NCBI GenBank assembly: GCA_950097015.1
Contig: CATNEN010000024.1
Span: forward strand, 4,526,001 to 4,590,000
Length of the DNA stretch: 64,000 nt
Source of the DNA: Macrostomum hystrix
Taxonomy: Eukaryota > Animalia > Platyhelminthes
Direction: 5' to 3'
How positions within the stretch are numbered: the first letter of the stretch is position 1; each line of letters starts with the position of its first letter. Below the pieces are notes generated by a model that was not told the DNA's origin, did no database searches, and worked only from the letters and a program-made list of their open reading frames with translations. Positions 1,804 to 36,019 of this stretch are shown here, piece after piece. A program made the position numbers and the translations under genes.

Positions 1804-4682
1804 ATGAACTCGCTAATCCTTCGGCTTCTGTTGCTGATGTTAATTGGTGAGTCTTATTGCTATTTCTTTAGAATTTTCTCAGCAACTGATTTCGATCAGT
1901 TGAACTTAAAGCATTGCGAACTTAATCTGCCCACACCCGACCCGTTCGACCGTGCAGTCGTGTGCCCGATGTACGGCAAAGGGGTGCCGCGGACAAAGGG
2001 CGCAGGAAACCGCGGCAGCGGAAACAACCGGAACAGCGGTCGCTACGGCTCAAGCGGAAGCAGCGGCTACTCGTCACTGCCCATGCTCATTCGCAGCAGA
2101 TTCTCGTGAGTGAGAAGGAGTGGGTGAGAAGGAGTGGGTGAGAAGGAGTGGGTGAGAAGGAGTGGGTGAGAAGGAGTGGGTGAGAAGGAGTGGGTGAGAA
2201 GGAGTGGGTGAGAAGGAGTGGGTGAGAAGGAGTGGGTGAGAAGGAGTGGGTGAGAAGGAGTGGGTGAGATGGAGTGGGTGAGAAGGAGTGGATGAGAAGG
2301 AGCGGGTGAGAAGGAGTGGGTGAGAAGGAGTGAGTGAGAAGGAGTGGGTGAGAAGGAGTGGGTGAGAAGGGGTGGGTGAGAAGGAGCGGGTGAGAAGGAG
2401 CGGGTGAGAAGGAGTGGATGAGAAGGAGCGGGTGAGAAGGAGTGGGTGAGAAGGAGTGAGTGAGAAGGAGTGGGTGAGAAGGAGTGGGTGAGAATGAGCG
2501 GGTGAGAAGGAGTGAGTGAGAAGGAGTGGATGAGAAGGAGCGGGTGAGAAGGAGTGGGTGAGAAGGAGTGAGTGAGAAGGAGTGGGTGAGAAGGAGTGGG
2601 TGAGAAGGAGTGGGTGAGAAGGAGTGGGTGAGAAGGAGTGGGTGAGAAGGAGTGGGTGAGAAGGAGCGGGTGAGAAGGAGCGGGTGAGAAGGAGTGGATG
2701 AGAAGGAGCGGGTGAGAAGGAGTGGGTGAGAAGGAGTGAGTGAGAAGGAGTGGGTGAGAAGGAGTGGGTGAGAAGGAGTGGGTGAGAAGGAGTGGGTGAG
2801 AAGGAGTGAGTGAGAATGCCCAGCTAACTATCCAGTGAACCTGTAATATCCGAACAGGTTCCTAGCCAAGTTCACAGCCTATAGGCTAGGCATCATCCTA
2901 GTGTCCCGTGACTGGCGCATTGCTCATCCAGACTACAGCGACAGCATGACCCTGTGCTACAGCGTGCGCCACAGCCTGCCGGACTGGCTGCAGGAGTCGG
3001 CACTGCAGCCCTGGCTGTATCGGAACCGGACCGTGCTGGGCTTGCACATCTGCCCGTTGGACTCGCAGCCGGATAAAGTATACTGCTGCGGCTTCAAGGA
3101 CGGACAGGAGTGCTGCACCTTCTGGGATGAGTGAGGCTGCTTTCACTGCGGACTCGCTTGACGAAGTAGAGAGGGTTATACGCGTTATGCGGGAACTGGT
3201 AATGAGAGAGCGGGTAGTGGGAGAGCGGGTAGTGTGAGAGCGGGATGGAATTAATGGGATTATGTGTACCAATTAGTCAGAAATGACAACACTGCAGGCA
3301 TTACTCGATCACTTCTTCACCCACACAGCTTCAGCCGCCTGTCATCAGTGGTGGTTGGCGGCATTCTGGCGGTCACGTCGAGTTTCCTGTTCGCCGCCTG
3401 GCTCTACCGGTGGTCGCTTAAACAACTGCGCTGGAATTTGTGAGGCTGACTGTTTGTAGATTGGAGAAGTGAAAGGTAGGGGAGATGAAAGGTAGGGGAC
3501 GGTGTGAGATGGTAGGGGAAGGTGTGAGATGGTAGGGGAAGATGTGAGATGGTAGGGGAAGGTGTGAGATGGTAGGGGACGGTGTGAGATGGTAGGGGAA
3601 GGTGTGAGATGGTAGGGGACGGTGTGAGATTGTAGGGGAAGGTGTGAGATGGTAGGGGAAGGTGTGAGATGGTAGGGGAAGGTGTGAGAGAGTAGGGCAA
3701 GATATGAGAGGGTAGGGGAAGATGTGAGATGGTGTAGGGGAAGGTGTGAGAGGGTAGGGGAAGATATGAGAGGGTAGGGGAAGATGTGAGATGGTGTATG
3801 GGAAGGTGTGAGAGGGTAGGGCAAGATATGAGAGGGTAGGGGAAGACATGAGAGTCTAGGGGAAGTAGGGGAAGATGTGAGAGGGTAGGGCAAGATATGA
3901 GAGGGTAGGGGAAGACATGAGAGTCTAGGGGAAGATGTGAGAGGGTAGGGGAAGATATGAGAGGGCAGGGGAAGATATGGGAATGTAGGGTAAGATGTGA
4001 GATGGTAGGGGAAGATAGGAGAGGGTAGGGGAAGATGTGAGATGGTGTATGGGAAGGTGTGAGAGGGTAGGGCAAGATGTGAGATGGTAGGAGAAGGTGC
4101 GAGAGGGTAGGGTAAGATGTGAGATGGTAGGAGAAGGTGCGAGAGGGTAGGGTAAGATGTGAGATGGTAGGAGAAGGTGTGAGAGGGTAGGGCAATATGT
4201 GAGAGGGTAGGAGAAGGTGTGAGAGGGTAGGGCAATATGTGAGAGGGTAGGAGAAGGTGTGAGAGGGTAGGGCAATATGTGAGAGGGTAGGAGAAGGTGT
4301 GAGAGGGTAGGGCAATATGTGAGAGGGTAGGAGAAGGTGTGAGAGGGTAGGGCAAGATGTGAGATGGTACGAGTAGGAAAAGGCGTGAGAGGGTAGTGGA
4401 ATTATTGAGAGGGTTTGGAAAGATGGCCCACTGCGAAATTAATAAAAGTTTTTCAGCTGCGAGTAATTTTGCCACCTTCCTCCAATTATCAGCCATTACA
4501 GTCACGCATCGCAGAGCCAAGCCGACTTACTCGGAGCTGATATTTCCATTGACGAAGTGGCTCGTTGGCCGCAGACTGAATCATCGCGGCAGCATCAGCC
4601 ACAGTCAAGGAAGATTGGAGCCAGACGGTTGCGGCACGCGTCGCAGTATCGACCGGCGATTGGTGGCGCGCGGGGACATTGA
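1804..4682 (+). CDS. Shisa-like/CX-domain single-pass membrane protein, copy 1 (~279 aa, 5 exons)
   Basis: Exons 1804-1846, 1883-2105, 2858-3130, 3329-3439, 4493-4682, all GT-AG, phases 1,2,2,2. Signal peptide MNSLILRLLLLMLI; Gly/Ser/Arg-rich segment; six-Cys domain C..C..CC..CC (LCYS...ICP...YCCG...ECC); TM VVVGGILAVTSSFLFAAWLY. The last-exon acceptor is uncertain (4457 would give an immediate stop). Confidence 0.8.
2106..2815. repeat. 14-bp minisatellite (GTGAGAAGGAGTGG)n filling intron 2 of Shisa-like copy 1
   Basis: About 50 tandem units starting exactly at the GT donor. Confidence 0.97.
3470..4395. repeat. 20-bp minisatellite (GGTGTGAGATGGTAGGGGAA)n in intron 4 of copy 1
   Basis: Tandem periodicity; ORFs repeat every 20 aa (3 units). 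Confidence 0.95.
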
Positions 4683-26271: not shown

Positions 26272-29200
26272 TCAGTGACAGTTCTGACACTTCGGGTGGC
26301 AGAGCTGTTTGTTAATTCGGCACCGACAGCCGGCAGATGTGTCGCCTTTGCCACCGGGACCCCAGCGGCGGCCTCGAGTAGCCCAGCAGATCTCAGTCTG
26401 GCACATTGAGCACATCAGCCAGTCGCAGCCCTCCTTCTTCTGTAGGAACACGCGGCAGTTGGGGCAGTTCATCGCTTCGCCTGACTGCACCATTTTCTGT
26501 GCGAAGATGGTGACCAAGAAATCGAAAGTCTTATTCACTTTTTAACTTTAAAGCTGCTATTCACGATGATTTAGCCTAAATCCAGCCTTACCACATCCGC
26601 CCTAGCTAAACACATCCGCCCCTAGCTACCCATATCCGCCCCTAGCTACCCGAATCCGCCCCTAGCTAACCACATCCGCCCTAGCTAAACACATCCGCCC
26701 CTAGCTACCCAAATCCGCCCTAGCTAACCACATCCGCCCCTAGCTACCCATATCCACCCCTAGCTACCCGAATCCGCCCCTAGCTAACCACATCCGCCCT
26801 AGCTAAACACATCCGCCCCGAGCTACCCATATCCGCTCCCTAGCTACCCGAATCCGCCCCTAGCTAACCACATCCGCCCTAGCTAAACACATCCGCCACT
26901 AGCTACCCAAATCCGCCCCTAGCTAACCACATCCGCCCCTAGCTACCCGAATCCGCCCCTAGCTACCCATATCCGCCCCTAGCTACCCAAATCCACAAAG
27001 CTACCCACATCCGCCCCTAGCTACCCAAATCCGCAAAGCTACCCACATCCGCCCCTAGCTACCCAAATCCGCCCCCTGAGGACTCGCCTCCAGCTTGGCC
27101 AGGGTGAGCTCGGCGGCCTTGTTATTCTGAGCGTCGCGCCTCAGCTGGTCCTGAAACAGGCGACAGCTGACGCCATTGTGGGAGGCGCGGCAGGTCACGC
27201 AGTTGTGCTCGCCGCAGCACTGGCAGAAGAAGCTGTTGACCTCTTCGGCTAGCTCAACGAAGGCCTCGCAATCGGGCGCCACACAGTGGAATGTGTTGGG
27301 AATGACTGCCTCGGCCTGGCGAAGGCCCAGACGCTGCAGACGGTCCAGCTCCGTGGATGATAGAAGCTTGGCGGCCTCGGCCTCCGTCACCGTCTGCTGG
27401 CACTGATCGTGCGGGCATCGGACAGGCAGGGTGTCGGCGTGCAGCAGGTGCTGCCGAAGGCACTCCGCGCACACCTCGTGGCCGCACTCGCGTAGCTGGA
27501 CGCCGCCGTCGCAGCCAGTCTTCACAGACACCTCAGTGATGCAGATTGGACACTGGAAATCTTGCCTAGCAGGGATTAGGGCACAGCTAGCTAAGGCCAG
27601 GTGCTCCCAGAGGTTGCGGCCACGCTGACGCTCGAGCTAGATTAGCGGTTTAGTTAGAGAAAACAACTCGGTAGAGTAGGGCCTGATTTGGTTGCTATGG
27701 TTACCGTCTTATCAGCATGCTGTTCAATTTCAATAAAATAAGATTAGGTTAAGCAAGAATTTTATAACTCTGGTTGGAACAGATGGTCACTCAGTTTATG
27801 AGCTTATTGTCTTGTGCATGCCATATCACTGAGCATGATATGTTCAGTGTTTGAAAGTCAACTTGAAGTGTTCACCAGTTGATTGTTGGTATACTAATTA
27901 ATTGATGAACCATTTAGTGAAGAACAATTGATTGGTGAACAATTGATTGATGAACCATTGAACTGATTGGTGAACAATTGATTGGTGAACAATTGATTGG
28001 TGAACAATTGATTAGTGAACAATTGAATTGATTGGTGAACAATTGATAGGTGAACAATTGATTAGTGAACAATTGAATTGATTGGTGAACAATTGATTGG
28101 TGAACAATTGATTGGTGAACAATTGATTGGTGAACAATTGATTGGTGAACAATTGATTGGTGAACAATTGATTGGTGAACAGTTGATTGGTGAACAATTG
28201 ATTGATGAACAATTGATTGGTAAACAATTGATAGATGAACAATTGATTGATGAACAATTGATTGGTGAACAATTGATTGGTGAACAATTGATTGGTGAAC
28301 AATTGATTGGTGAACAATTGATTGGTGAACAATTGAATTGATTGGTGAACAATTGATTGGTGAACAATTGAATTGATTGGTGAACAATTTAATTGATTGG
28401 TGAACAATTTAACTGATTGGTGAACAATTTATTGGTGAACAATTTATTGGTGAACAATTGGTGAAGAATTGATTAATAATCGATTCTCTGACAGTAGTTG
28501 AGGCTTTTTATTAGTTAAGAATTGTGTGAATCAGATTTGCTTGAAAACAAAGCAAGTGACATAAACAACTGTAGTATTCAAGGCTTAATTAATGACTCAA
28601 TGTCATTCATTCTTTTTATAGCAAAAGTGAACAAAAGTTAGATAAATATATATTTATATATACTATATAATCTTTCGCACAACTTATCAAATAACAAAAT
28701 GGCGCATATAATTAATGAAAGGCAACAATAGCACAAAGCACTTAATTTCATTTTCAAAAGAAAACTCGAAAATAACTGACTAATTTGCAGCAAAAAAACA
28801 AAAATAATTCCAGTGAAAACATTCTAGAGTATTATTATATCAATGGTAACCGGACCGCAAAAATTTGGGAAATTTGGGACATACTACTAATAAGTAGCCA
28901 TAGAGTATTACACGCTAGTTATGTATTTTGTTTTATTTAACTAGATATATGCATAGAAATTAAGCTGCAGGCATAATTATTAGATAATGATTGCTTAAAC
29001 ATCAAACGCGATGACTATTTTTTAAAACCAGAAAGTTTTTAAAAATAGTTTTCTTATTATAAACTAACTTAAGAAAGCTCAGCAGTAGGAAATATGTGGC
29101 GCAAATTTAATAGCTAAATAACATACAGGAAGATACATACAACTTTGTATAAGTGATAAAAGTATAATAAATGTATATTCTTATTTAACAATGCAACAAT

Positions 29201-32200
29201 AGATAATAAATTTCTGGCAGACAAAACAATTCAGGATGGGACTAACGAACCAATAAGCCATTCAATTGTAAATTTATATGCTCCATTGGCGAATCAATCC
29301 AAGATATACAGATTGATACAGATACAGTGCAGAGATGAGACACGCGAGAGATGAGACAGTGCAGAGATGAGACAGTGCAGAGATGAGACAGTGCAGAGAT
29401 GAGACACAGGAGAGATGAGACAGTGCAGAGATGAGACAGTGCAGATATGAGACAGTGCAGAGATGAGACAGTGCAGAGATGAGACAGTGCAGAGATGAGA
29501 CAGTGCAGAGATGAGACAGTGCAGAGATGAGACAGTGCAGAGATGAGACACAGGAGAGATGAGACAGTGCAGAGATGAGACAGTGCAGAGATGAGACAGT
29601 GCAGAGATGAGACAGTGCAGAGATGAGACAGGGGAGTCATGAGACAGGGGAGATGAGACAGGGGAGATGAGACAGGGGAGATGAGACAGGGGAGAGATGA
29701 GACACGGGAGGGATGAGACACGGGAGAGATGAGACACGGAAGAGATGAGACACGGGAGAGATGAGACAGGGGAGTCATGAGACAGGGGAGATGAGACAGG
29801 GGAGATGAGCCAGGGGAGAGATGAGACACGGGAGAGATAAGACAATGGAGAGATGAGACACATGAGAGATGAGACAGGGGAGAGATGAGACACGGAAGAG
29901 ATGAGACACGGGAGAGATGAGACAAGGGAGAGATGAGACACATGAGAGATGAGACACGGGAGAGATGAGACAAGGGAGAGATAAGACAGGGGAGAGATGA
30001 GACAATGGAGAGATGAGACACAGGAGAGATGAGACAGTGCAGAGATGAGACAGTGCAGAGATGAGACAGTGCAGAGATGAGACAGTGCAGAGATGAGACA
30101 GTGCAGAGATGAGACAGTGCAGAGATGAGACACAGGAGAGATGAGACAGTGCAGAGATGAGACAGTGCAGAGATGAGACAGTGCAGAGATGAGACAGTGC
30201 AGAGATGAGACAGGGGAGTCATGAGACAGGGGAGATGAGACAGGGGAGATGAGACAGGGGAGATGAGACAGGGGAGAGATGAGACACGGGAGGGATGAGA
30301 CACGGGAGAGATGAGACACGGGAGAGATGAGACACGGGAGAGATGAGACAGGGGAGTCATGAGACAGGGGAGATGAGACAGGGGAGATGAGCCAGGGGAG
30401 AGATGAGACACGGGAGAGATAAGACAATGGAGAGATGAGACACATGAGAGATGAGACAGGGGAGAGATGAGACACGGAAGAGATGAGACACGGGAGAGAT
30501 GAGACAAGGGAGAGATGAGACACATGAGAGATGAGACACGGGAGAGATGAGACAAGGGAGAGATAAGACAGGGGAGAGATGAGACAATGGAGAGATGAGA
30601 CAGGAGAGATGAGACAAGGGAGAGATGAGACAGGGGAGAGATGAGACAAGGGAGAGATAAGACTGGGGAGAGATGAGACAATGGAGAGATGAGACAGGAG
30701 AGATGAGACAAGGCAGAGATGAGACAGGGGAGAGATGAGACACGGGACAGATGAGACACTGGAGTCACTCCCAATCTCAAAGCCTAGGTAACAAACAGTA
30801 AATCTTTAACATACATTTAGAAGCCCACATTAAAGTTGAAAAATCATTCGAATTCAAATATCAATCCATCTGAGTTTAAGGCTTTATCTCATAACTCATA
30901 ATCTCATAAAGTATTGAAATAATAATAACATTTAGTCTGACGAGATCAGTCTAACAATTAAAAAGCTCTAAGCTTTTGTACTTTAGCAAGCTTAGCAACA
31001 TCAGCAGAGAATTTACTCTTACTTTGACACAAAAAACGCCAATTTTGAGGCACTGAATAATATGGGGGCAATTTTCGCAGAAAAGTCCACGACAAGAAAA
31101 ATATATGGACACTTTTCAGAGATTTTTTCACGTTGCTCGACAAACTTATAAAAGGTGCACAAAATTTAGGATAAGTGCGCTTTTAGAAGCCACAAAAACA
31201 ACACGAGTTGCAACATTAAATGTGCTTATTGTATATTTTTGAGAATCTGTACTACTTTTCACACGCTACTATTCTAATGATGCAAAAGTGAGCTGGTGAG
31301 TGTAGGGAATGAAGAGAATGAGCTGGGGAGTGTAGGGAATGAAGAGAATGAGCTGGGGAGTGTAGGGAATGAAGAGAATGAGCTGGGGAGTGTAGGGAAT
31401 GAAGAGAATGAGCTGGGGAGTGTAGGGAATGAAGAGAATGAGCTGGGGAGTGTAGGGAATGAAGAGAATGAGCTGGGGAGTGTAGGGAATGAAGAGAATG
31501 AGCTGGGGAGTGTAGGGAATGAAGGGAATGAGCTGGGGAGTGTAGGGAATTAAGGGAATGTGTAGGGAATGAAGGGAATGAGCTTTGGAGTGTAGGGGAT
31601 GAATGAAAATTAGTTGGGGCGTGCAGTGTGTTGACTTATTTTGATTTAGCTGCAGTGTGCACGGCCTGGTGTGTAGGGAATGAAAGGAATGAGCAAAAGT
31701 GAACTGAAAATGCAATTAATCTGTATTTAACAATGAAGTTATCTTTAGTGAAGTATAATACAATAAAAAGTAAAGCTGTCAAGCACGGAATCACTTTCTA
31801 TCCAGGAGATTCTGCCAGCGCTCCTGGTCTCTTTTGTTGCGAATGGCCATGGATCTAGCTCGGAGGGCGCCCATCGCTCTATCAAAGAATATGTCCTCAT
31901 GACTAGCATTGTCAAGCTTCGGTTCGGCCGTATCAGCCTTCTTATCAGCTGAATCTTCAACAGCCGCCTCGTCGTAACAGTAAGGATCCTCCATATCGTT
32001 ATAGACGTCTTCAACATCATCAGCTGTAGGAACCATCGACGGAACAATTTGAATAGGCTTCCAAGCTGGCGGAGGCAGCGAAGAAGGCGGCGATGCCGCT
32101 GATGGACGCTGCAAGGTTGGCGGAGGCAGCGAAGAAGGCGGCGATGCCGCTGATGGACGCTGCAAGGTTGGCGGAGGCAGCAAAGAAGGCGGCGATGCCG

Positions 32201-35200
32201 CTGATGGACGCTGCAAGGTTGGCGGAGGCAGCGAAGAAGGCGGCGATGCCGCTGATGGACGCTGCAAGGTTGGCGGAGGCAGCGAAGAAGGCGGCGATGC
32301 CGCTGGTGGACGCTGCAAAGTTGGCGGAGGCGGACGTGGCGGCTTTGAAAGACTCAACGCTGAGAGCATTGTGGCAGATGGTTTCGGCGGCACAGGCGGC
32401 TTTGGAGTGGACTGTTGCAGATTCGAGTTTTGCGGTAAATCATTTGGGATTTGCCTCGGCATACTCTGAGGTTGCAATGCTGGATTTGCATTTCGCTTCG
32501 GCGAATTCCGAAGACTTGCTTGTTGTGATTGCAGATTCCGTGGTGGTAATGGCGGATTCGGATTTTGCATCGGCAGATTCTGCGGCGGTAATTGTAGATT
32601 TGCGTTTCGCAATGGCAGGTTCCGTGGCGGTAATGGTGGATTTGCGTTTTGCGATGGCAGATTCCGTGGTGGTAATGGTGGATTTGCGTTTTGCGATGGC
32701 AGATTCCGTGGTGGTAATGGTGGATTTGCGTTTTGCGATGGCAGATTTTGCGGCGGTAATGGTAGATTTGCGTTCTGCGATGGCAGATTTTGCGGCGGTA
32801 ATGGTAGATTTGCGTTCTGCGATGGCAGATTTTGCGGCGGCAATGATTTCTTTAATATTTTCGACAAAAACGGCAGCTTAAAGCACGAATGAGGCTTAGT
32901 TTTCAGTGGCGGATCCAATGGTGGTACAGGCGGAAGCGGCATTTTAGATCTAGCACTGCTGCGGCCGATGCCGTTGTTGGTTGCTGTGGCTGTTGCCGCG
33001 GCAGCAACTCGTTGCTAAAAGAAGAGCATGTTTATAGCATTGCATTGTATCAGCAATAGCAGCGGCTCGGGCCTAGGTGGCACGTCTGCATAAAATTTTG
33101 ATATCAAGATTGATCAAATGTTTTCGAAAATAATTGAAGTGCATAAAAAATAATAGAACAAACTGATTTTCTCAGCAACTTGTTGATTTTATTGACAAAT
33201 AGAGCTAGGAAAAAGCTGAATTGTTTTATTGAACTGATAAATAATTTCAAAATTGGGTGCTTTGCTATTGAATTGTTGCGAATATAAATCATTATAGAAG
33301 AAATACTAGTGCTCAATATACTGGCATGCGCTAATCTAGTCAAACCAACACTATATCAACACTATATCTTCCTGAAATTCACGGGGACGAGGGAGACAGG
33401 ATTTGATGGCGGCAAAAATGAATTAACAGATAATAAACTTCATGCATTTCTAGGCAAAACTGATGTTCAACAACTATAAATCAGCAGTATTAGAAATGTT
33501 GACAAAAGCAGCAAAAAGCAAAATATTTAAACAAGACTGTACAATAACAAGTTTCTTTTTTGATCTTTCTAAATACCAACTTATCACACACCACCTTTCA
33601 TTCTTAATTTCTCCAGAATAAGAATGAGACCGAAATTAGTTTCATGATTCTCCAGAAATTCTTAAAACTTCTCTTACTGTTTAAATTTATAATCATGATC
33701 TATAATCATTTATAATTTCTGTAGGGATCATCAGTTCAAGGATTATTAAATTTGAGGATCGGAAACTGAAAGTGATTTTTCATTTTCAAAATCAGTAAGT
33801 TAGTGATAGTTCAATATGGGGATCATGAAGTTAGTGATTGTTCAATTTGGGGATCATGAAGTTAGTGATTGTTCAATTTGGGGATCATGAAGTTAGTGAT
33901 TGTTCAATTTGGGGATCATGAAGTTAGTGATTGTTCAATATGGGGATCATGAAGTTAGTGATTGTTCAATATGTGGATCATGAAGTTAGTGATTGCTAAA
34001 TATGGGGATCATGTAGTTAGTGGTTGCTAAATATGGGGATTATGAAGTTAGTGAGTGTTCAAAAAGGGGATCATGAAGTTGTGATTGTTAAAGTTGGGAA
34101 TTGTAAAACATTTCAGGGAATAAAGTTTGCACTTTTGCAGAAGTACGGAGATGCACTTAAAATTGCATATACTAAAAGTTTCCGCAAGAACAAAGGCATG
34201 AATCACGCGATGCTCACCTCTTCAAGGAATTCTTTTTCCAATCGTTCCTGCCTGGCGACAGCATCGGCAATCGGCGCCACGGGCCGATAGCCCGGGGGCG
34301 GCTCAGCGGAGCACATCTCGCAGCCGAGCCTTGTGGGCTCATTCAAAAAGGTGCAGACGGAGCAGACCCAGCCGGCTGGCGGCGCCGACTCAGGCAGCGA
34401 AGTTGGCAACTGCCGCTGCCACCGATGCTGAAGTGTTTTATTCGAGTTCTATAAAATATTTCTGACATTGTTGCTAGCCAGATAAACGAAGAGACAGCAG
34501 CCAGATCATTTAGAAATTCAATCGTTAAGACAAGACAGACATCGGCACACATCCTAGATCCTTCAATCCGTCCGTCATCGGATCCTTCAAGGCATCAGCA
34601 ATTGGCACACCTCCCAGATCCTTCAAGGCATCAGCAATCGACACACCTCCCAGATCCTTCAAGGGACACACCTCCCAGATCCTTCAAGGGACACACCTCC
34701 CAGATCCTTCAAGCGACACACCTCCCAGATCCTTCAAGGGACACACCTCCCAGATCCTTCAAGCGACACACCTCCCAGATCCTTCAAGGGACACACCTCC
34801 CAGATTCTTCAAGCGACACACCTCCCAGATCCTTCAAGGGAAACACCTCCCAGATCCTTCAATAAAATAGTTCTAAACAAGAAGACCCACCGGTTGGCTA
34901 TTCTGCCATGCGCACGGACCAGCAACCAGCTGCCAGTCGTCATATGAGTTCATTTCGTCAACTCCGCCCGTTGCCGAATTATTCCGCTGCAGGTGCAGTC
35001 TTCCGAGTTGACCGCGCGCTGCCTCCTTGAGTCGTCGCAGTTCGTCAGGCGGCGGTCGCCAGTCGGTGAAGGAGCGCACATATACTCTAATAGGCAGCGG
35101 CGATGGTGCAGCAGCCAGTGGGGTATCGTCTGGCGGAGCCTCCTGGCCAACTATGCAAGTCTGCAAATGTGTCGGTATATCGAATCGCAGCAGTAATTCG

Positions 35201-35460
35201 CGCTTCAGATCTGCCACGGTGACAGTCGGATTGCTGTCCGGCATGACCAGGTGAATCGGCTGGCAGGCTCGCGAGCATTTGGTCTGCAGCACCACGCTGA
35301 TTAGACGCAAGGGCTCAATAGGGGACGACAAAGAGTCGGGATCGACTCCGACACTCCGACCGACACCCGAGCAGAGCTGCTCAGCCAGGCGCTTGGCTTC
35401 CTGTTCGTTGCCTGTTAGCATGGCAGTCCGAAGATGATTAACCAACTGCCGAGTGTCCAT
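26272..35460 (-). CDS. RBCK1: HOIL-1L/RBCK1 RBR E3 ubiquitin ligase (LUBAC subunit), core isoform ~517 aa
   Basis: Exons 35460-34891 (LTM-like helices + UBL), 34427-34218 ([23 protein letters not shown]), 27636-27088 (RING1 + IBR), 26496-26272 (RING2 KKEGCDW with catalytic Cys and the diagnostic [15 protein letters not shown]...CHPKCQNCH end). All junctions are phase 0; the last intron is GC-AG. Confidence 0.93.
26590..27075. repeat. ~21-bp minisatellite (ATCCGCCCCTAGCTACCCAT)n in the last RBCK1 intron
   Basis: Tandem periodicity starting right after the GC donor. Confidence 0.94.
27890..28470. repeat. 15-bp minisatellite (AATTGATTGGTGAAC)n
   Basis: Tandem periodicity; 5-aa periodic ORFs. 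Confidence 0.95.
29320..30770. repeat. 16-bp minisatellite (GAGATGAGACA[GTGCA/CGGGA])n with a ~580-bp higher-order duplication
   Basis: Tandem periodicity; the block of unit variants recurs after ~580 bp. Confidence 0.96.
31295..31690. repeat. 30-bp minisatellite (GTGTAGGGAATGAAGAGAATGAGCTGGGGA)n
   Basis: Tandem periodicity ([10 protein letters not shown]). Confidence 0.95.
31791..33014 (-). CDS. large proline-rich optional exon of RBCK1 (407 codons), in frame after the NZF exon
   Basis: The acceptor TTCTTTTAG|CAACGA at 33014 is phase 0, matching the NZF exon donor at 34218. The frame is open to TGA 31791. It encodes 39-bp ([13 protein letters not shown]) and 51-bp ([17 protein letters not shown]) repeats, PxxP motifs and an acidic [11 protein letters not shown] segment. 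Confidence 0.65.
   Translation of the reverse strand, partial: QRVAAAATATATNNGIGRSSARSKMPLPPVPPLDPPLKTKPHSCFKLPFLSKILKKSLPPQNLPSQNANLPLPPQNLPSQNANLPLPPQNLPSQNANPPLPPRNLPSQNANPPLPPRNLPSQNANPPLPPRNLPLRNANLQLPPQNLPMQNPNPPLPPRNLQSQQASLRNSPKRNANPALQPQSMPRQIPNDLPQNSNLQQSTPKPPVPPKPSATMLSALSLSKPPRPPPPTLQRPPAASPPSSLPPPTLQRPSAASPPSSLPPPTLQRPSAASPPSLLPPPTLQRPSAASPPSSLPPPTLQRPSAASPPSSLPPPAWKPIQIVPSMVPTADDVEDVYNDMEDPYCYDEAAVEDSADKKADTAEPKLDNASHEDIFFDRAMGALRARSMAIRNKRDQERWQNLLDRK
33825..34080. repeat. ~31-bp minisatellite (GGGGATCATGAAGTTAGTGATTGTTCAATTT)n
   Basis: Tandem periodicity in RBCK1 intron 2. Confidence 0.92.
34590..34860. repeat. ~26-bp minisatellite (GACACACCTCCCAGATCCTTCAAG)n in RBCK1 intron 1
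   Basis: Tandem periodicity. Confidence 0.92.
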
Positions 35461-36019
35461 GGACACGGTCTAGTACTGCAAGTATTGCAGAAGATTAATT
35501 GGCTTACAACAGATCCTAAAAGCTTTCTAAAACATTTAATGATCTATTTCCATCCTTTCTATACATAGCTGGACAATGCCCTAGTTGATCAGGCAGAAGC
35601 TACACGAGTCGTGCATTTTAGCTTTGCTTTAGAATATCAGGTTGTATTAGCTAGACCTTAATCTTATTTGAGCATGCCTAGGGCATACTGAGGTGAATGG
35701 TCCATCATTGGTGTAGCATTAAGCCAAAAAGGACACTTTAGTTTAATAACTGCTAGGGCCATATTTTCTTGCTAAGTGAGTGAAAAGTTTTAATGACCTT
35801 TAAGTGCTGCAAATATTGAGCCTTGCAGCTATACTTGTCTTATTGACAATTAGTTGCTTCTTAAAGCAGAAATTGTTGTTCATGAGCTAAGTATACCAAG
35901 AGTCCAAGACAAATAATAGAATCAGTTTTATAGTAAGATTGTGTATAAACACAGGGAGCATATCTCATTTAAGTCTAAAGATGTTCATAGACCAGGATTA
36001 ATGAAAAATGATTTATTTC

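What the first reader, a model, noticed from the sequence alone, without database searches (positions are those of the whole stretch)
31791..33014. HOIL-1L carries a 407-codon proline-rich, tyrosine-motif exon between NZF and RING1
Seen: the exon is in frame after NZF, yet NZF also joins RING1 directly in frame (..EFLEE|[13 protein letters not shown]..). It encodes PxxP motifs ([17 protein letters not shown]), two internal coding repeats and acidic [11 protein letters not shown]. It ends [16 protein letters not shown], which resembles the helix preceding RING1. Two outcomes are possible: (a) a terminal exon giving LTM-UBL-NZF plus an adaptor tail with no RBR, or (b) splicing AA|GTGATT (31795) to an internal phase-2 acceptor at 27586, giving ...LLDRNCALIP...RING1, a ~900-aa ligase. 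Known: vertebrate HOIL-1L has only a short linker here; PxxP binds SH3 and acidic YxDV-like motifs bind SH2. Inference: LUBAC wired to tyrosine-kinase or SH3 signalling in flatworms.
Basis: partly seen in the sequence, partly recalled or inferred. Interest (0 to 1): 0.7.

Follow-up and report, generated by a model that had tools for sequence, protein, structure and literature searches.

The report
Flatworm HOIL-1L alternative last exon
In the flatworm Macrostomum hystrix, one copy of the ubiquitin-ligase gene HOIL-1L (RBCK1) is spliced, in the RNA runs examined, into extra sequence inside its large intron. The predicted proteins keep the ubiquitin-binding front half but lack the ligase half, and one carries a 407-residue proline-rich tail found nowhere else.

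Summary
A 407-codon open frame (33014-31794, stop 31793-31791, minus strand) sits in the 6.6-kb intron between the NZF and RING1 exons of an RBCK1/HOIL-1L gene. It is in frame with the NZF exon.

Assembled RNA from four runs shows the predicted junction 34218->33014 in three runs. One contig carries spliced leader, exon 1, NZF exon and 255 nt of the new exon. Contigs run unbroken through the stop and the proposed donor at 31795.

A second acceptor at 33371, also seen in three of four runs, puts a stop six codons after NZF and is followed by two AATAAA signals. Both forms encode HOIL-1L without its RBR ligase, like mammalian RBCK2.

The tail is an orphan. It has no Pfam, PDB, word-search or exhaustive-search relatives, no second genomic copy, and is absent from the paralogue on contig C38. 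Two fifths of it is in-frame minisatellite.

Weak signs of coding constraint exist. SH3/SH2 docking remains motif-level speculation.

The scan had not found this before on other DNA.

The parts
34891..35476 (-). Exon 1 of the RBCK1/HOIL-1L paralogue. It is trans-spliced to the Macrostomum spliced leader at 35476/35475, the start ATG is at 35460-35458, and it encodes LTM-UBL (190 codons, ends in phase 0).
   Evidence: Contigs in all four runs cover 34891-35476 with a 24-nt 5' loose end. That end equals the 3' part of the M. lignano SL printed in PMC8629364. Frame. Weak match to human HOIL-1L LTM-UBL 5y3t, E 0.043, query residues 9-113.
34218..34427 (-). Exon 2: NZF zinc finger plus the stretch that follows it, 70 codons, ending ..EFLEE in phase 0. 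Its donor is shared by all downstream acceptors.
   Evidence: Joint 34427<->34891 in four of four runs. Pfam Zn_ribbon_RanBP 3.6e-7. HOIL-1L NZF structures 8im5 and 3b08, E 4e-9 to 5e-9.
33015..33371 (-). Extension used when the upstream alternative acceptor (AG at 33373-33372) is chosen. It reads EDIVLI then TAG (33353-33351). AATAAA lies at 33230-33225 and 33192-33187.
   Evidence: Joint 34218->33371 in X2, X3 and X4. Translation. Poly(A) signals read. Contigs 33231-33370, 33062-33213, 32987-33130 and 32760-33119 are colinear with the genome.
31791..33014 (-). The finding: 407-codon tail exon plus stop (TGA 31793-31791), in frame with NZF.
   Evidence: Translation. Joint 34218->33014 in X1 (a 1075-nt contig holding SL, exon 1, exon 2 and 255 nt of this exon), X2 and X3. 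Contigs cover the whole exon with breaks only inside the tandem arrays. Stop-free P about 1e-4.
32516..32845 (-). 42-bp (14-residue) tandem array, about 8 units of [16 protein letters not shown]. It holds four PPLPPR motifs (PxxPxR).
   Evidence: TRF. Units and motif positions. Variable columns 2/5/10 by codon position. 69% identical to a non-genic minisatellite on contig C28.
32067..32331 (-). 51-bp (17-residue) tandem array, 5 units of [17 protein letters not shown], 98% alike, so a recent expansion.
   Evidence: TRF. Units printed.
31800..31901 (-). Predicted 34-residue C-terminal alpha-helix ([34 protein letters not shown]). The acidic Tyr cluster (YNDM, Y345, Y347) lies just upstream at about 32003-31970.
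   Evidence: AlphaFold2 single-sequence model of the last 101 residues: helix 66-99 with pLDDT about 91, the rest at 56-63 with no secondary structure. Tyr positions.
30735..31790 (-). Transcribed sequence after the stop. It is an unspliced 3' UTR of at least 1 kb that runs into the 30-bp and 16-bp minisatellites. The 3' end was not found.
   Evidence: Contigs 31497-32096, 31594-32096, 31616-32096, 30801-31327 (runs 66 nt over the stretch end) and 30927-31328. No AATAAA/ATTAAA before 29111/28937.
27088..27636 (-). RING1-IBR exon of the canonical ligase form (183 codons, phase 0 at both ends). The donor is inferred as GC-AG (GAG|GCGAGT).
   Evidence: 8eaz E 8e-23, Pfam IBR 1.7e-7. Boundaries inferred from the sequence and the human alignment. 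No RNA was laid here.
26272..26496 (-). RING2 exon with the catalytic Cys motif (GCDW) and the HOIL-1L-specific C-terminus ..CHPKCQNCH*.
   Evidence: 8bvl E 1.3e-35 over residues 12-88, alignment. Sequence.

Best explanation
The 407-codon ORF is an alternative last exon of one of two HOIL-1L/RBCK1 paralogues of Macrostomum hystrix.

Shown:
- The NZF exon donor (34218) is spliced to either of two acceptors inside the 6.6-kb, minisatellite-filled intron that precedes RING1.
- Acceptor 33014 continues the frame for 407 codons. The predicted protein is 667 residues: LTM-UBL-NZF plus a proline-rich tail.
- Acceptor 33371 gives a stop after six codons, for a predicted 266 residues.
- Neither form reaches the RBR exons in the assembled RNA of the laid stretch.

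Inferred:
- Both products keep the parts that in mammals tether HOIL-1L to HOIP and SHARPIN (LTM, UBL) and read linear ubiquitin (NZF), and lose the ester-forming RBR ligase.
- They should therefore act like mammalian RBCK2 or engineered RBR-deleted HOIL-1L, as a scaffold or reader without HOIL-1L's own catalysis.
- The tail is a young, lineage-restricted, mostly disordered extension built partly from intronic minisatellites and ending in one long helix.
- Its PPLPPR repeats and YNDM site could recruit SH3 or SH2 partners, but that is only a motif-level guess.
For: -: joints 34427<->34891 (4/4 runs), 34218->33014 (X1, X2, X3) and 34218->33371 (X2, X3, X4), all GT..AG on the minus strand.
- one X1 contig holds SL, exon 1, exon 2 and 255 nt of the tail exon. 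Introns 33372-34217 and 34428-34890 have zero depth apart from a repeat.
- contigs cross the stop and 31795 unbroken in all four runs.
- k-mer depth of the unique 3' part of the exon (8.3-15.6) is on a par with exons 1-2 (10.4-12.3).
- frames and stops.
- 207 unique codons stop-free, P about 1e-4.
- among the 42-nt units, 10 of 17 variable columns are third codon positions (binomial P 0.027), with pairwise synonymous 60 against non-synonymous 53.
- AATAAA twice after the 33371 acceptor.
- domain identities.
- PMC8534859: the HOIL-1L N-terminal region binds HOIP and SHARPIN, and loss of HOIL-1L E3 activity raises LUBAC output.
- RBCK2 as an inhibitory splice variant: Tatematsu et al. 2008, seen only as a title in the reference list of PMC8245127.
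Against: - No protein-level evidence that the tail is made.
- Contigs are unstranded assemblies that drop rare variants, and they cannot show 3' ends.
- The tail form has no canonical poly(A) signal for about 2.7 kb, so its transcripts may be long, unstable or further processed outside the laid stretch.
- In X4 the tail-coding junction was not assembled at all. In X1 the other junction was not.
- GC3 of the tail is 0.46 against 0.69 in the conserved exons, and codon usage does not prefer its frame.
- No relative was found anywhere.
- Two of the three variants between runs are non-synonymous.
- The RBR exons are intact and highly conserved, so a ligase-bearing product must also be made in some way that I could not see.
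Confidence: 0.62

Rival explanations
1. Real transcripts, but no selected tail. A strong cryptic acceptor in a minisatellite-laden intron captures splicing. The useful, or merely tolerated, outcome is truncation or down-regulation of the ligase form. The 407-residue ORF would be a young, neutral by-product, and the short 33371 form with its own AATAAA would be the designed RBR-less mRNA.
For: - The tail is an orphan and is absent from the C38 paralogue.
- 42-bp unit is 69% like a non-genic minisatellite.
- The 51-bp array is 98% uniform, so very recent.
- GC3 is low and there is no codon-usage frame signal.
- The 33371 form has canonical poly(A) signals and the tail form has none nearby.
- In X4 only the 33371 junction was assembled.
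Against: - 207 unique codons are open exactly in the frame set by NZF (P about 1e-4).
- Both arrays have periods divisible by 3, whereas only about a quarter of the other arrays in the window do.
- Third-position excess of variation among the repeat units.
- The predicted C-terminal helix is confident.
Confidence: 0.24
2. Reader's option (b). The exon is internal, spliced from AA|GTGATT at 31795 to an acceptor at 27586, giving a ligase of roughly 900 residues with a proline-rich insert.
For: Both sites exist and are phase-compatible. The RBR is intact.
Against: In all four runs one contig crosses 31795 without a branch, joint or loose end and continues at least 140-300 nt. Further contigs lie down to 30735. 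The acceptor at 27586 would delete 17 conserved residues that align with human HOIL-1L ahead of RING1.
Confidence: 0.04
3. A separate gene nested in the intron on the same strand. It would have its own start (ATG 32942), be trans-spliced at 33014, and not be part of HOIL-1L.
For: An ATG lies 24 codons into the ORF. SL trans-splicing and operons are common in the genus (PMC8629364; PMC10468722). In X3 the tail contig depth (15.6) slightly exceeds exon 1 (12.3).
Against: The only SL-bearing loose end in the stretch is at 35476. The 33014 acceptor is seen joined in cis to exon 2 in three runs, once in a contig that reaches the SL.
Confidence: 0.04
4. Split expression. The locus behaves as two cistrons. 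The upstream mRNA ends in the tail exon. The RBR half is released from the same long primary transcript by SL trans-splicing at the 27636 acceptor, and the SL's terminal ATG supplies an in-frame start (ATG|CTC GAG..).
For: - Transcription continues at least 1 kb past the stop into the repeats.
- The RING1 exon starts in phase 0.
- The SL ends in ATG.
- 15% of M. lignano genes are estimated to lie in operons with repeat-rich spacers (PMC8629364).
Against: Pure inference. The RBR exons were outside the one stretch I could lay. The paralogue has the ordinary fused structure with an intron of about 200 nt. The direct join is in frame and homologous to the human protein.
Confidence: 0.06

Closest known systems
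RBCK2, the mammalian RBCK1 splice variant lacking the RING-IBR half (Tatematsu et al. 2008 J Biol Chem 283:11575, seen only as a reference title in PMC8245127)
   Same: It arises by alternative splicing of the same gene family. By the reference title it is a splice variant that inhibits RBCK1. That it keeps the N-terminal half and lacks the RING-IBR half is from my own knowledge.
   Different: The flatworm forms arise from two acceptors inside the NZF-RING1 intron. One adds a 407-residue orphan proline-rich tail that has no counterpart in RBCK2. The events are independent, not homologous. Inhibition was not tested.
Engineered or disease-type HOIL-1L without ligase activity (reviewed in PMC8534859)
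   Same: LTM-UBL-NZF is retained and the RBR is missing. In mammals this leaves LUBAC assembled and raises its linear-chain output towards substrates.
   Different: Here the form is a natural, abundant transcript isoform. Whether M. hystrix assembles a LUBAC with this paralogue is not known. LDD-type HOIP relatives exist, but a HOIP UBA was not detected.
SHARPIN and stand-alone LTM-UBL-NZF genes of the same genome (earlier notes s1-286227, s1-270710; loci on C3, C10 and C41)
   Same: The same LTM-UBL-NZF architecture without an RBR.
   Different: Those are separate genes. Here the architecture is produced by splicing of an RBR-bearing gene, and it carries a tail.
Alternative last exons / intronic polyadenylation isoforms, and exonisation of intronic repeats
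   Same: A cryptic 3' splice site in a long intron, followed by termination, truncates the protein. The new coding sequence is drawn from intronic repeat DNA.
   Different: The repeat source is minisatellite arrays with 3n periods rather than transposons. The poly(A) site of the long form is unidentified.
Class II SH3 ligands of the PxxPxR type (for example Sos1 PPVPPR, own knowledge)
   Same: Four PPLPPR and one PPVPPK match PxxPx[RK].
   Different: This is a motif match only, inside a low-complexity repeat. No partner, no conservation, no binding data.

Membership tests
HOIL-1L / RBCK1 | N-terminal LTM helices plus UBL | tested here: inconclusive
   Pfam finds nothing. The best PDB match is human HOIL-1L LTM-UBL 5y3t at E 0.043 over residues 9-113. 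The C38 paralogue matches at 35% identity.
HOIL-1L / RBCK1 | Npl4-type zinc finger (NZF) | tested here: met
   PF00641 3.6e-7. Top PDB matches are HOIL-1L NZF 8im5 and 3b08, E 4e-9 to 5e-9.
HOIL-1L / RBCK1 | RING1-IBR-RING2 with catalytic Cys and the HOIL-1L-specific C-terminal zinc cluster | tested here: met
   8eaz E 8e-23 for RING1-IBR. 8bvl E 1.3e-35 for RING2, with GCDW and ..GCRCR..CHP.CQNCH aligned. This holds for the gene, not for the isoforms that end in or before the tail exon.
RBCK2-like RBR-less splice isoform | An mRNA from the RBCK1 gene that keeps UBL and NZF and stops before RING1 | tested here: met
   Junctions 34218->33014 and 34218->33371 in RNA contigs. Stops at 31791 and 33351. 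No onward joint.
RBCK2-like RBR-less splice isoform | Binds and inhibits, or otherwise modulates, the full-length ligase or LUBAC | not testable with these tools
   Needs co-immunoprecipitation and ubiquitination assays.
   No joint or loose end at 31795. Contigs cross it in four of four runs. Rare variants cannot be excluded from contigs.
SH3-ligand / SH2-docking adaptor tail | PxxPx[RK] or [RK]xxPxxP cores, and YxxM / YxN phosphotyrosine sites | tested here: met
   Five PxxPx[RK], no [RK]xxPxxP. Y338 in YNDM, plus Y345 and Y347. Motif presence only.
SH3-ligand / SH2-docking adaptor tail | Demonstrated binding or phosphorylation, or conservation of the motifs in orthologues | not testable with these tools
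   No orthologue sequences are reachable. No relatives.

The most novel reading that the evidence does not exclude
A coding exon born largely from intronic minisatellites has become the main C-terminus of a HOIL-1L paralogue and works as a multivalent SH3/SH2 docking platform. That would couple a linear-ubiquitin reader (LTM-UBL-NZF) to tyrosine-kinase or adaptor signalling. The ligase half of the same locus would be made separately or only rarely.
Probability: 0.12. Interest if true: 0.65.

Novelty: new variant of a known kind. Interest (0 to 1): 0.33.

Why it matters
This would be a natural case in which a HOIL-1L gene chiefly expresses ligase-less forms. That is the state which in mice boosts LUBAC output. 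The animal also has stand-alone LTM-UBL-NZF genes and an expanded set of HOIP-type LDD genes. It could serve as a comparative handle on what the HOIL-1L RBR is for.

It is also a clean example of minisatellite DNA being recruited into an expressed open reading frame.

The scope is narrow: one paralogue, one species, no evidence of tail function. It adds to rather than changes what is known about RBCK1 isoforms.

Tried and rejected
- **Relatives of the tail.** All of these were blank: Pfam, the word-index search with the whole exon (8000 low-complexity candidates scored, none significant), the exhaustive search of 1.84 billion representatives with the last 101 residues, PDB sequences (only chance-level rows), ESM Atlas features, and the organism's own genome at E<=10.
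- **Tail end copied from the RING1-preceding helix.** Rejected. The alignments are no better than shuffles.
- **Antisense ORF 32093-32881 on the plus strand (262 aa).** A by-product of the same tandem arrays. The junctions are CT..AC on the plus strand, so the RNA is minus-strand.
- **Second copy of the exon.** The only other DNA match (C28) is a non-genic minisatellite with open frames on both strands.
- **Word-index search with the RING1-IBR exon.** I hoped to reach transcript-derived protein fragments and then their contigs. Nothing came back in the permitted length range, so the NZF->RING1 junction could not be checked that way.
- **SL-donated ATG as the start of exon 1.** Rejected. It is followed by TAC TAG.
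- **A small intron between 33231 and 33119.** Rejected. There are no splice dinucleotides, and one X2 contig is colinear across it.
- **Joined (spliced) protein models.** These were neither searched nor folded. Every search was made exon by exon by reference.

Full report
**What is there**

On the minus strand, window 33014-31794 is an uninterrupted 407-codon frame closed by TGA at 31793-31791. It starts immediately after a pyrimidine-rich acceptor (..CTCTTCTTTTAG|CAACG).

Two fifths of the exon is tandem DNA:
- A 42-bp array, 32516-32845, 7.9 copies, 87% matches.
- A 51-bp array, 32067-32331, 5.2 copies, 98% matches.

The remaining 207 codons are unique. They are stop-free in this frame with P about 1e-4 under shuffling, while the other two frames carry 3 and 20 stops.

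**The host gene**

The genome has 220 Mb in 42 contigs.

The gene is an RBCK1/HOIL-1L:
- Exon 1 matches human HOIL-1L LTM-UBL weakly (5y3t, E 0.043).
- Exon 2 is the NZF (8im5/3b08, E 4e-9; PF00641).
- The RING1-IBR exon matches 8eaz at 8e-23.
- The RING2 exon matches 8bvl at 1.3e-35, with the catalytic GCDW and the HOIL-1L C-terminal zinc cluster intact.

Exon 1 and exon 2 both end in phase 0, and both the tail exon and the RING1 exon start in phase 0. From sequence and the human alignment I infer that the RING1-IBR exon ends at 27088 with a GC-AG intron and that RING2 begins at 26496. This gives a canonical protein of about 517 residues.

**RNA evidence**

One search found four runs of one 2020 study that hold 86-93% of the exon's words. 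Their kind is not on record, but laid on 30801-35600 they behave as RNA. Introns are skipped, and the 5' end of exon 1 carries 24 foreign letters. Those letters equal the 3' part of the 35-nt M. lignano spliced leader printed in PMC8629364.

Joints seen, all GT..AG on the minus strand:

| Joint | X1 | X2 | X3 | X4 |
|---|---|---|---|---|
| 34891<->34427 | yes | yes | yes | yes |
| 34218->33014 | yes | yes | yes | no |
| 34218->33371 | no | yes | yes | yes |

- In X1 a single 1075-nt contig runs SL, exon 1, exon 2 and 255 nt of the tail exon.
- The tail exon is covered throughout, with contig breaks only inside the two arrays.
- In every run a contig crosses the stop and the proposed donor at 31795 without a branch. 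These contigs reach 31497-31654.
- Further contigs lie at 30801-31328, and one runs off the stretch end.
- No contig other than the SL one has a part that lies elsewhere.
- The depth of the unique 3' part of the exon (8.3-15.6) is similar to exons 1-2 (10.4-12.3).
- In X1 and X4 the exon-2 contig passes into one acceptor with no branch.

Within the limits of contigs, which drop rare variants and cannot show 3' ends, the exon is joined to HOIL-1L, is not spliced onward, and together with the 33371 form accounts for most of what is assembled from this gene's 5' half.

**The second acceptor**

Splicing to 33371 reads EDIVLI and then TAG at 33353-33351. Two AATAAA signals follow, at 33230-33225 and 33192-33187, and depth falls after them. 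This looks like a compact intronic-polyadenylation mRNA for LTM-UBL-NZF plus six residues.

The tail form, by contrast, has no AATAAA or ATTAAA before 29111/28937. Its 3' end is unknown.

**Origin of the tail**

- It has no relatives: Pfam, the word search, the exhaustive search with the last 101 residues, PDB, the Atlas and the organism's own genome were all blank.
- The only other DNA match is a non-genic minisatellite on C28, 69% identical to the 42-bp array.
- A second HOIL-1L paralogue on C38 is 60% identical in RING1-IBR. It has the homologous NZF|RING1 junction with an intron of only about 200 nt, itself a 23-bp minisatellite, and no extra exon.
- The window is packed with minisatellites. 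Each intron of this gene is largely one array.

So the exon is derived, lineage-restricted and partly built from such arrays.

**Is it coding?**

For:
- The open frame (P about 1e-4).
- Both arrays have 3n periods, against about a quarter of the other arrays in the window.
- Among the first seven 42-nt units, 10 of 17 variable columns are third codon positions (P 0.027). Synonymous codon differences are as frequent as non-synonymous ones (60 against 53).
- AlphaFold2 without an alignment predicts a confident 34-residue terminal helix (pLDDT about 91). The preceding residues have no secondary structure and pLDDT of 56-63.

Against:
- GC3 is 0.46 against 0.69 in the conserved exons.
- There is no codon-usage preference for the frame.
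- Of the three variants between runs, two are non-synonymous.

I read this as a young exon that has probably been translated for some time. Its function is unproven.

**Mechanism**

Shown: two RBR-less transcript forms exist.

Inferred from mammalian work (PMC8534859): the N-terminal region binds HOIP and SHARPIN, and loss of HOIL-1L E3 activity raises LUBAC output. The title of Tatematsu et al. 2008 (in the reference list of PMC8245127) names RBCK2 as an inhibitory splice variant. By analogy, these products would be ligase-less scaffold or reader forms.

The genome does encode HOIP-type LDD domains: nine hits, seven of them in tandem on C11. A HOIP UBA was not detected, but that search rang nowhere, including its controls, so it is uninformative.

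The tail carries four PPLPPR and one PPVPPK (PxxPx[RK]) and a YNDM site. SH3 or SH2 docking is possible but rests on motifs alone.

**What remains open**

The RBR exons are intact and must be translated somehow. I could not see how, because the single reads call could not span to 27636 within the 6000-letter limit, and the word-index search with the RING1 exon found nothing usable.

The options are:
- A minor canonical junction.
- Stage- or tissue-specific skipping of both acceptors.
- More speculatively, SL trans-splicing at 27636, with the SL's ATG in frame.

Joined spliced proteins were never searched or folded. All searches were made exon by exon by reference. 

**Verdict**

This is a new variant of a known kind: an RBR-less RBCK1 isoform, here with an orphan, minisatellite-derived tail. 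Interest is modest.

Noticed in passing
window 35458-35476 (minus strand): Exon 1 is SL trans-spliced. The SL's terminal ATG is followed in the exon by TAC TAG, a two-codon upstream ORF, and the real start ATG lies at 35460.
   Followed up: yes
window 26591-27075, 27896-28460, 29331-30758, 31289-31581, 33797-34098, 34581-34862; L015 (C38 paralogue) 2056-2220, 2772-2936, 3528-3728, 3977-4499: Nearly every intron of this gene and of its paralogue consists largely of one minisatellite array, a different unit in each. The whole 64-kb window holds about 35 such arrays.
   Followed up: partly
window 27082-27090: The RING1-IBR exon seems to end with a GC-AG intron (GAG|GCGAGT). A GT donor in the right phase is not available there. 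This is inferred from the human alignment, with no RNA checked.
   Followed up: partly
G000:C11:5374527-5397348 and C39:12492561-12496643 (L016, L017): There are nine matches to the HOIP linear-chain determining domain PF18091. Seven lie in tandem within 23 kb on C11, in long open frames of 569-1242 aa. This suggests an expanded HOIP-like family.
   Followed up: no
G000:C3:9301881-9304820; C10:395023-395882; C41:282098-282958: UBL plus NZF matches occur with no RING1-IBR match nearby, consistent with stand-alone LTM-UBL-NZF genes noted earlier by the scan. C10 and C41 give identical scores, so they may be a recent duplicate or an uncollapsed haplotype.
   Followed up: partly
window 33041-33370 versus 32760-33014, runs X1 and X4: The four runs differ in which acceptor was assembled (X1 only 33014, X4 only 33371). 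They also differ at several SNPs (31959, 32405, 32824, 34260). The choice may depend on stage, tissue or genotype.
   Followed up: no
window 32093-32881 (plus strand): A 262-aa antisense ORF runs across the same tandem arrays. It shows how these repeats keep several frames open by themselves.
   Followed up: yes
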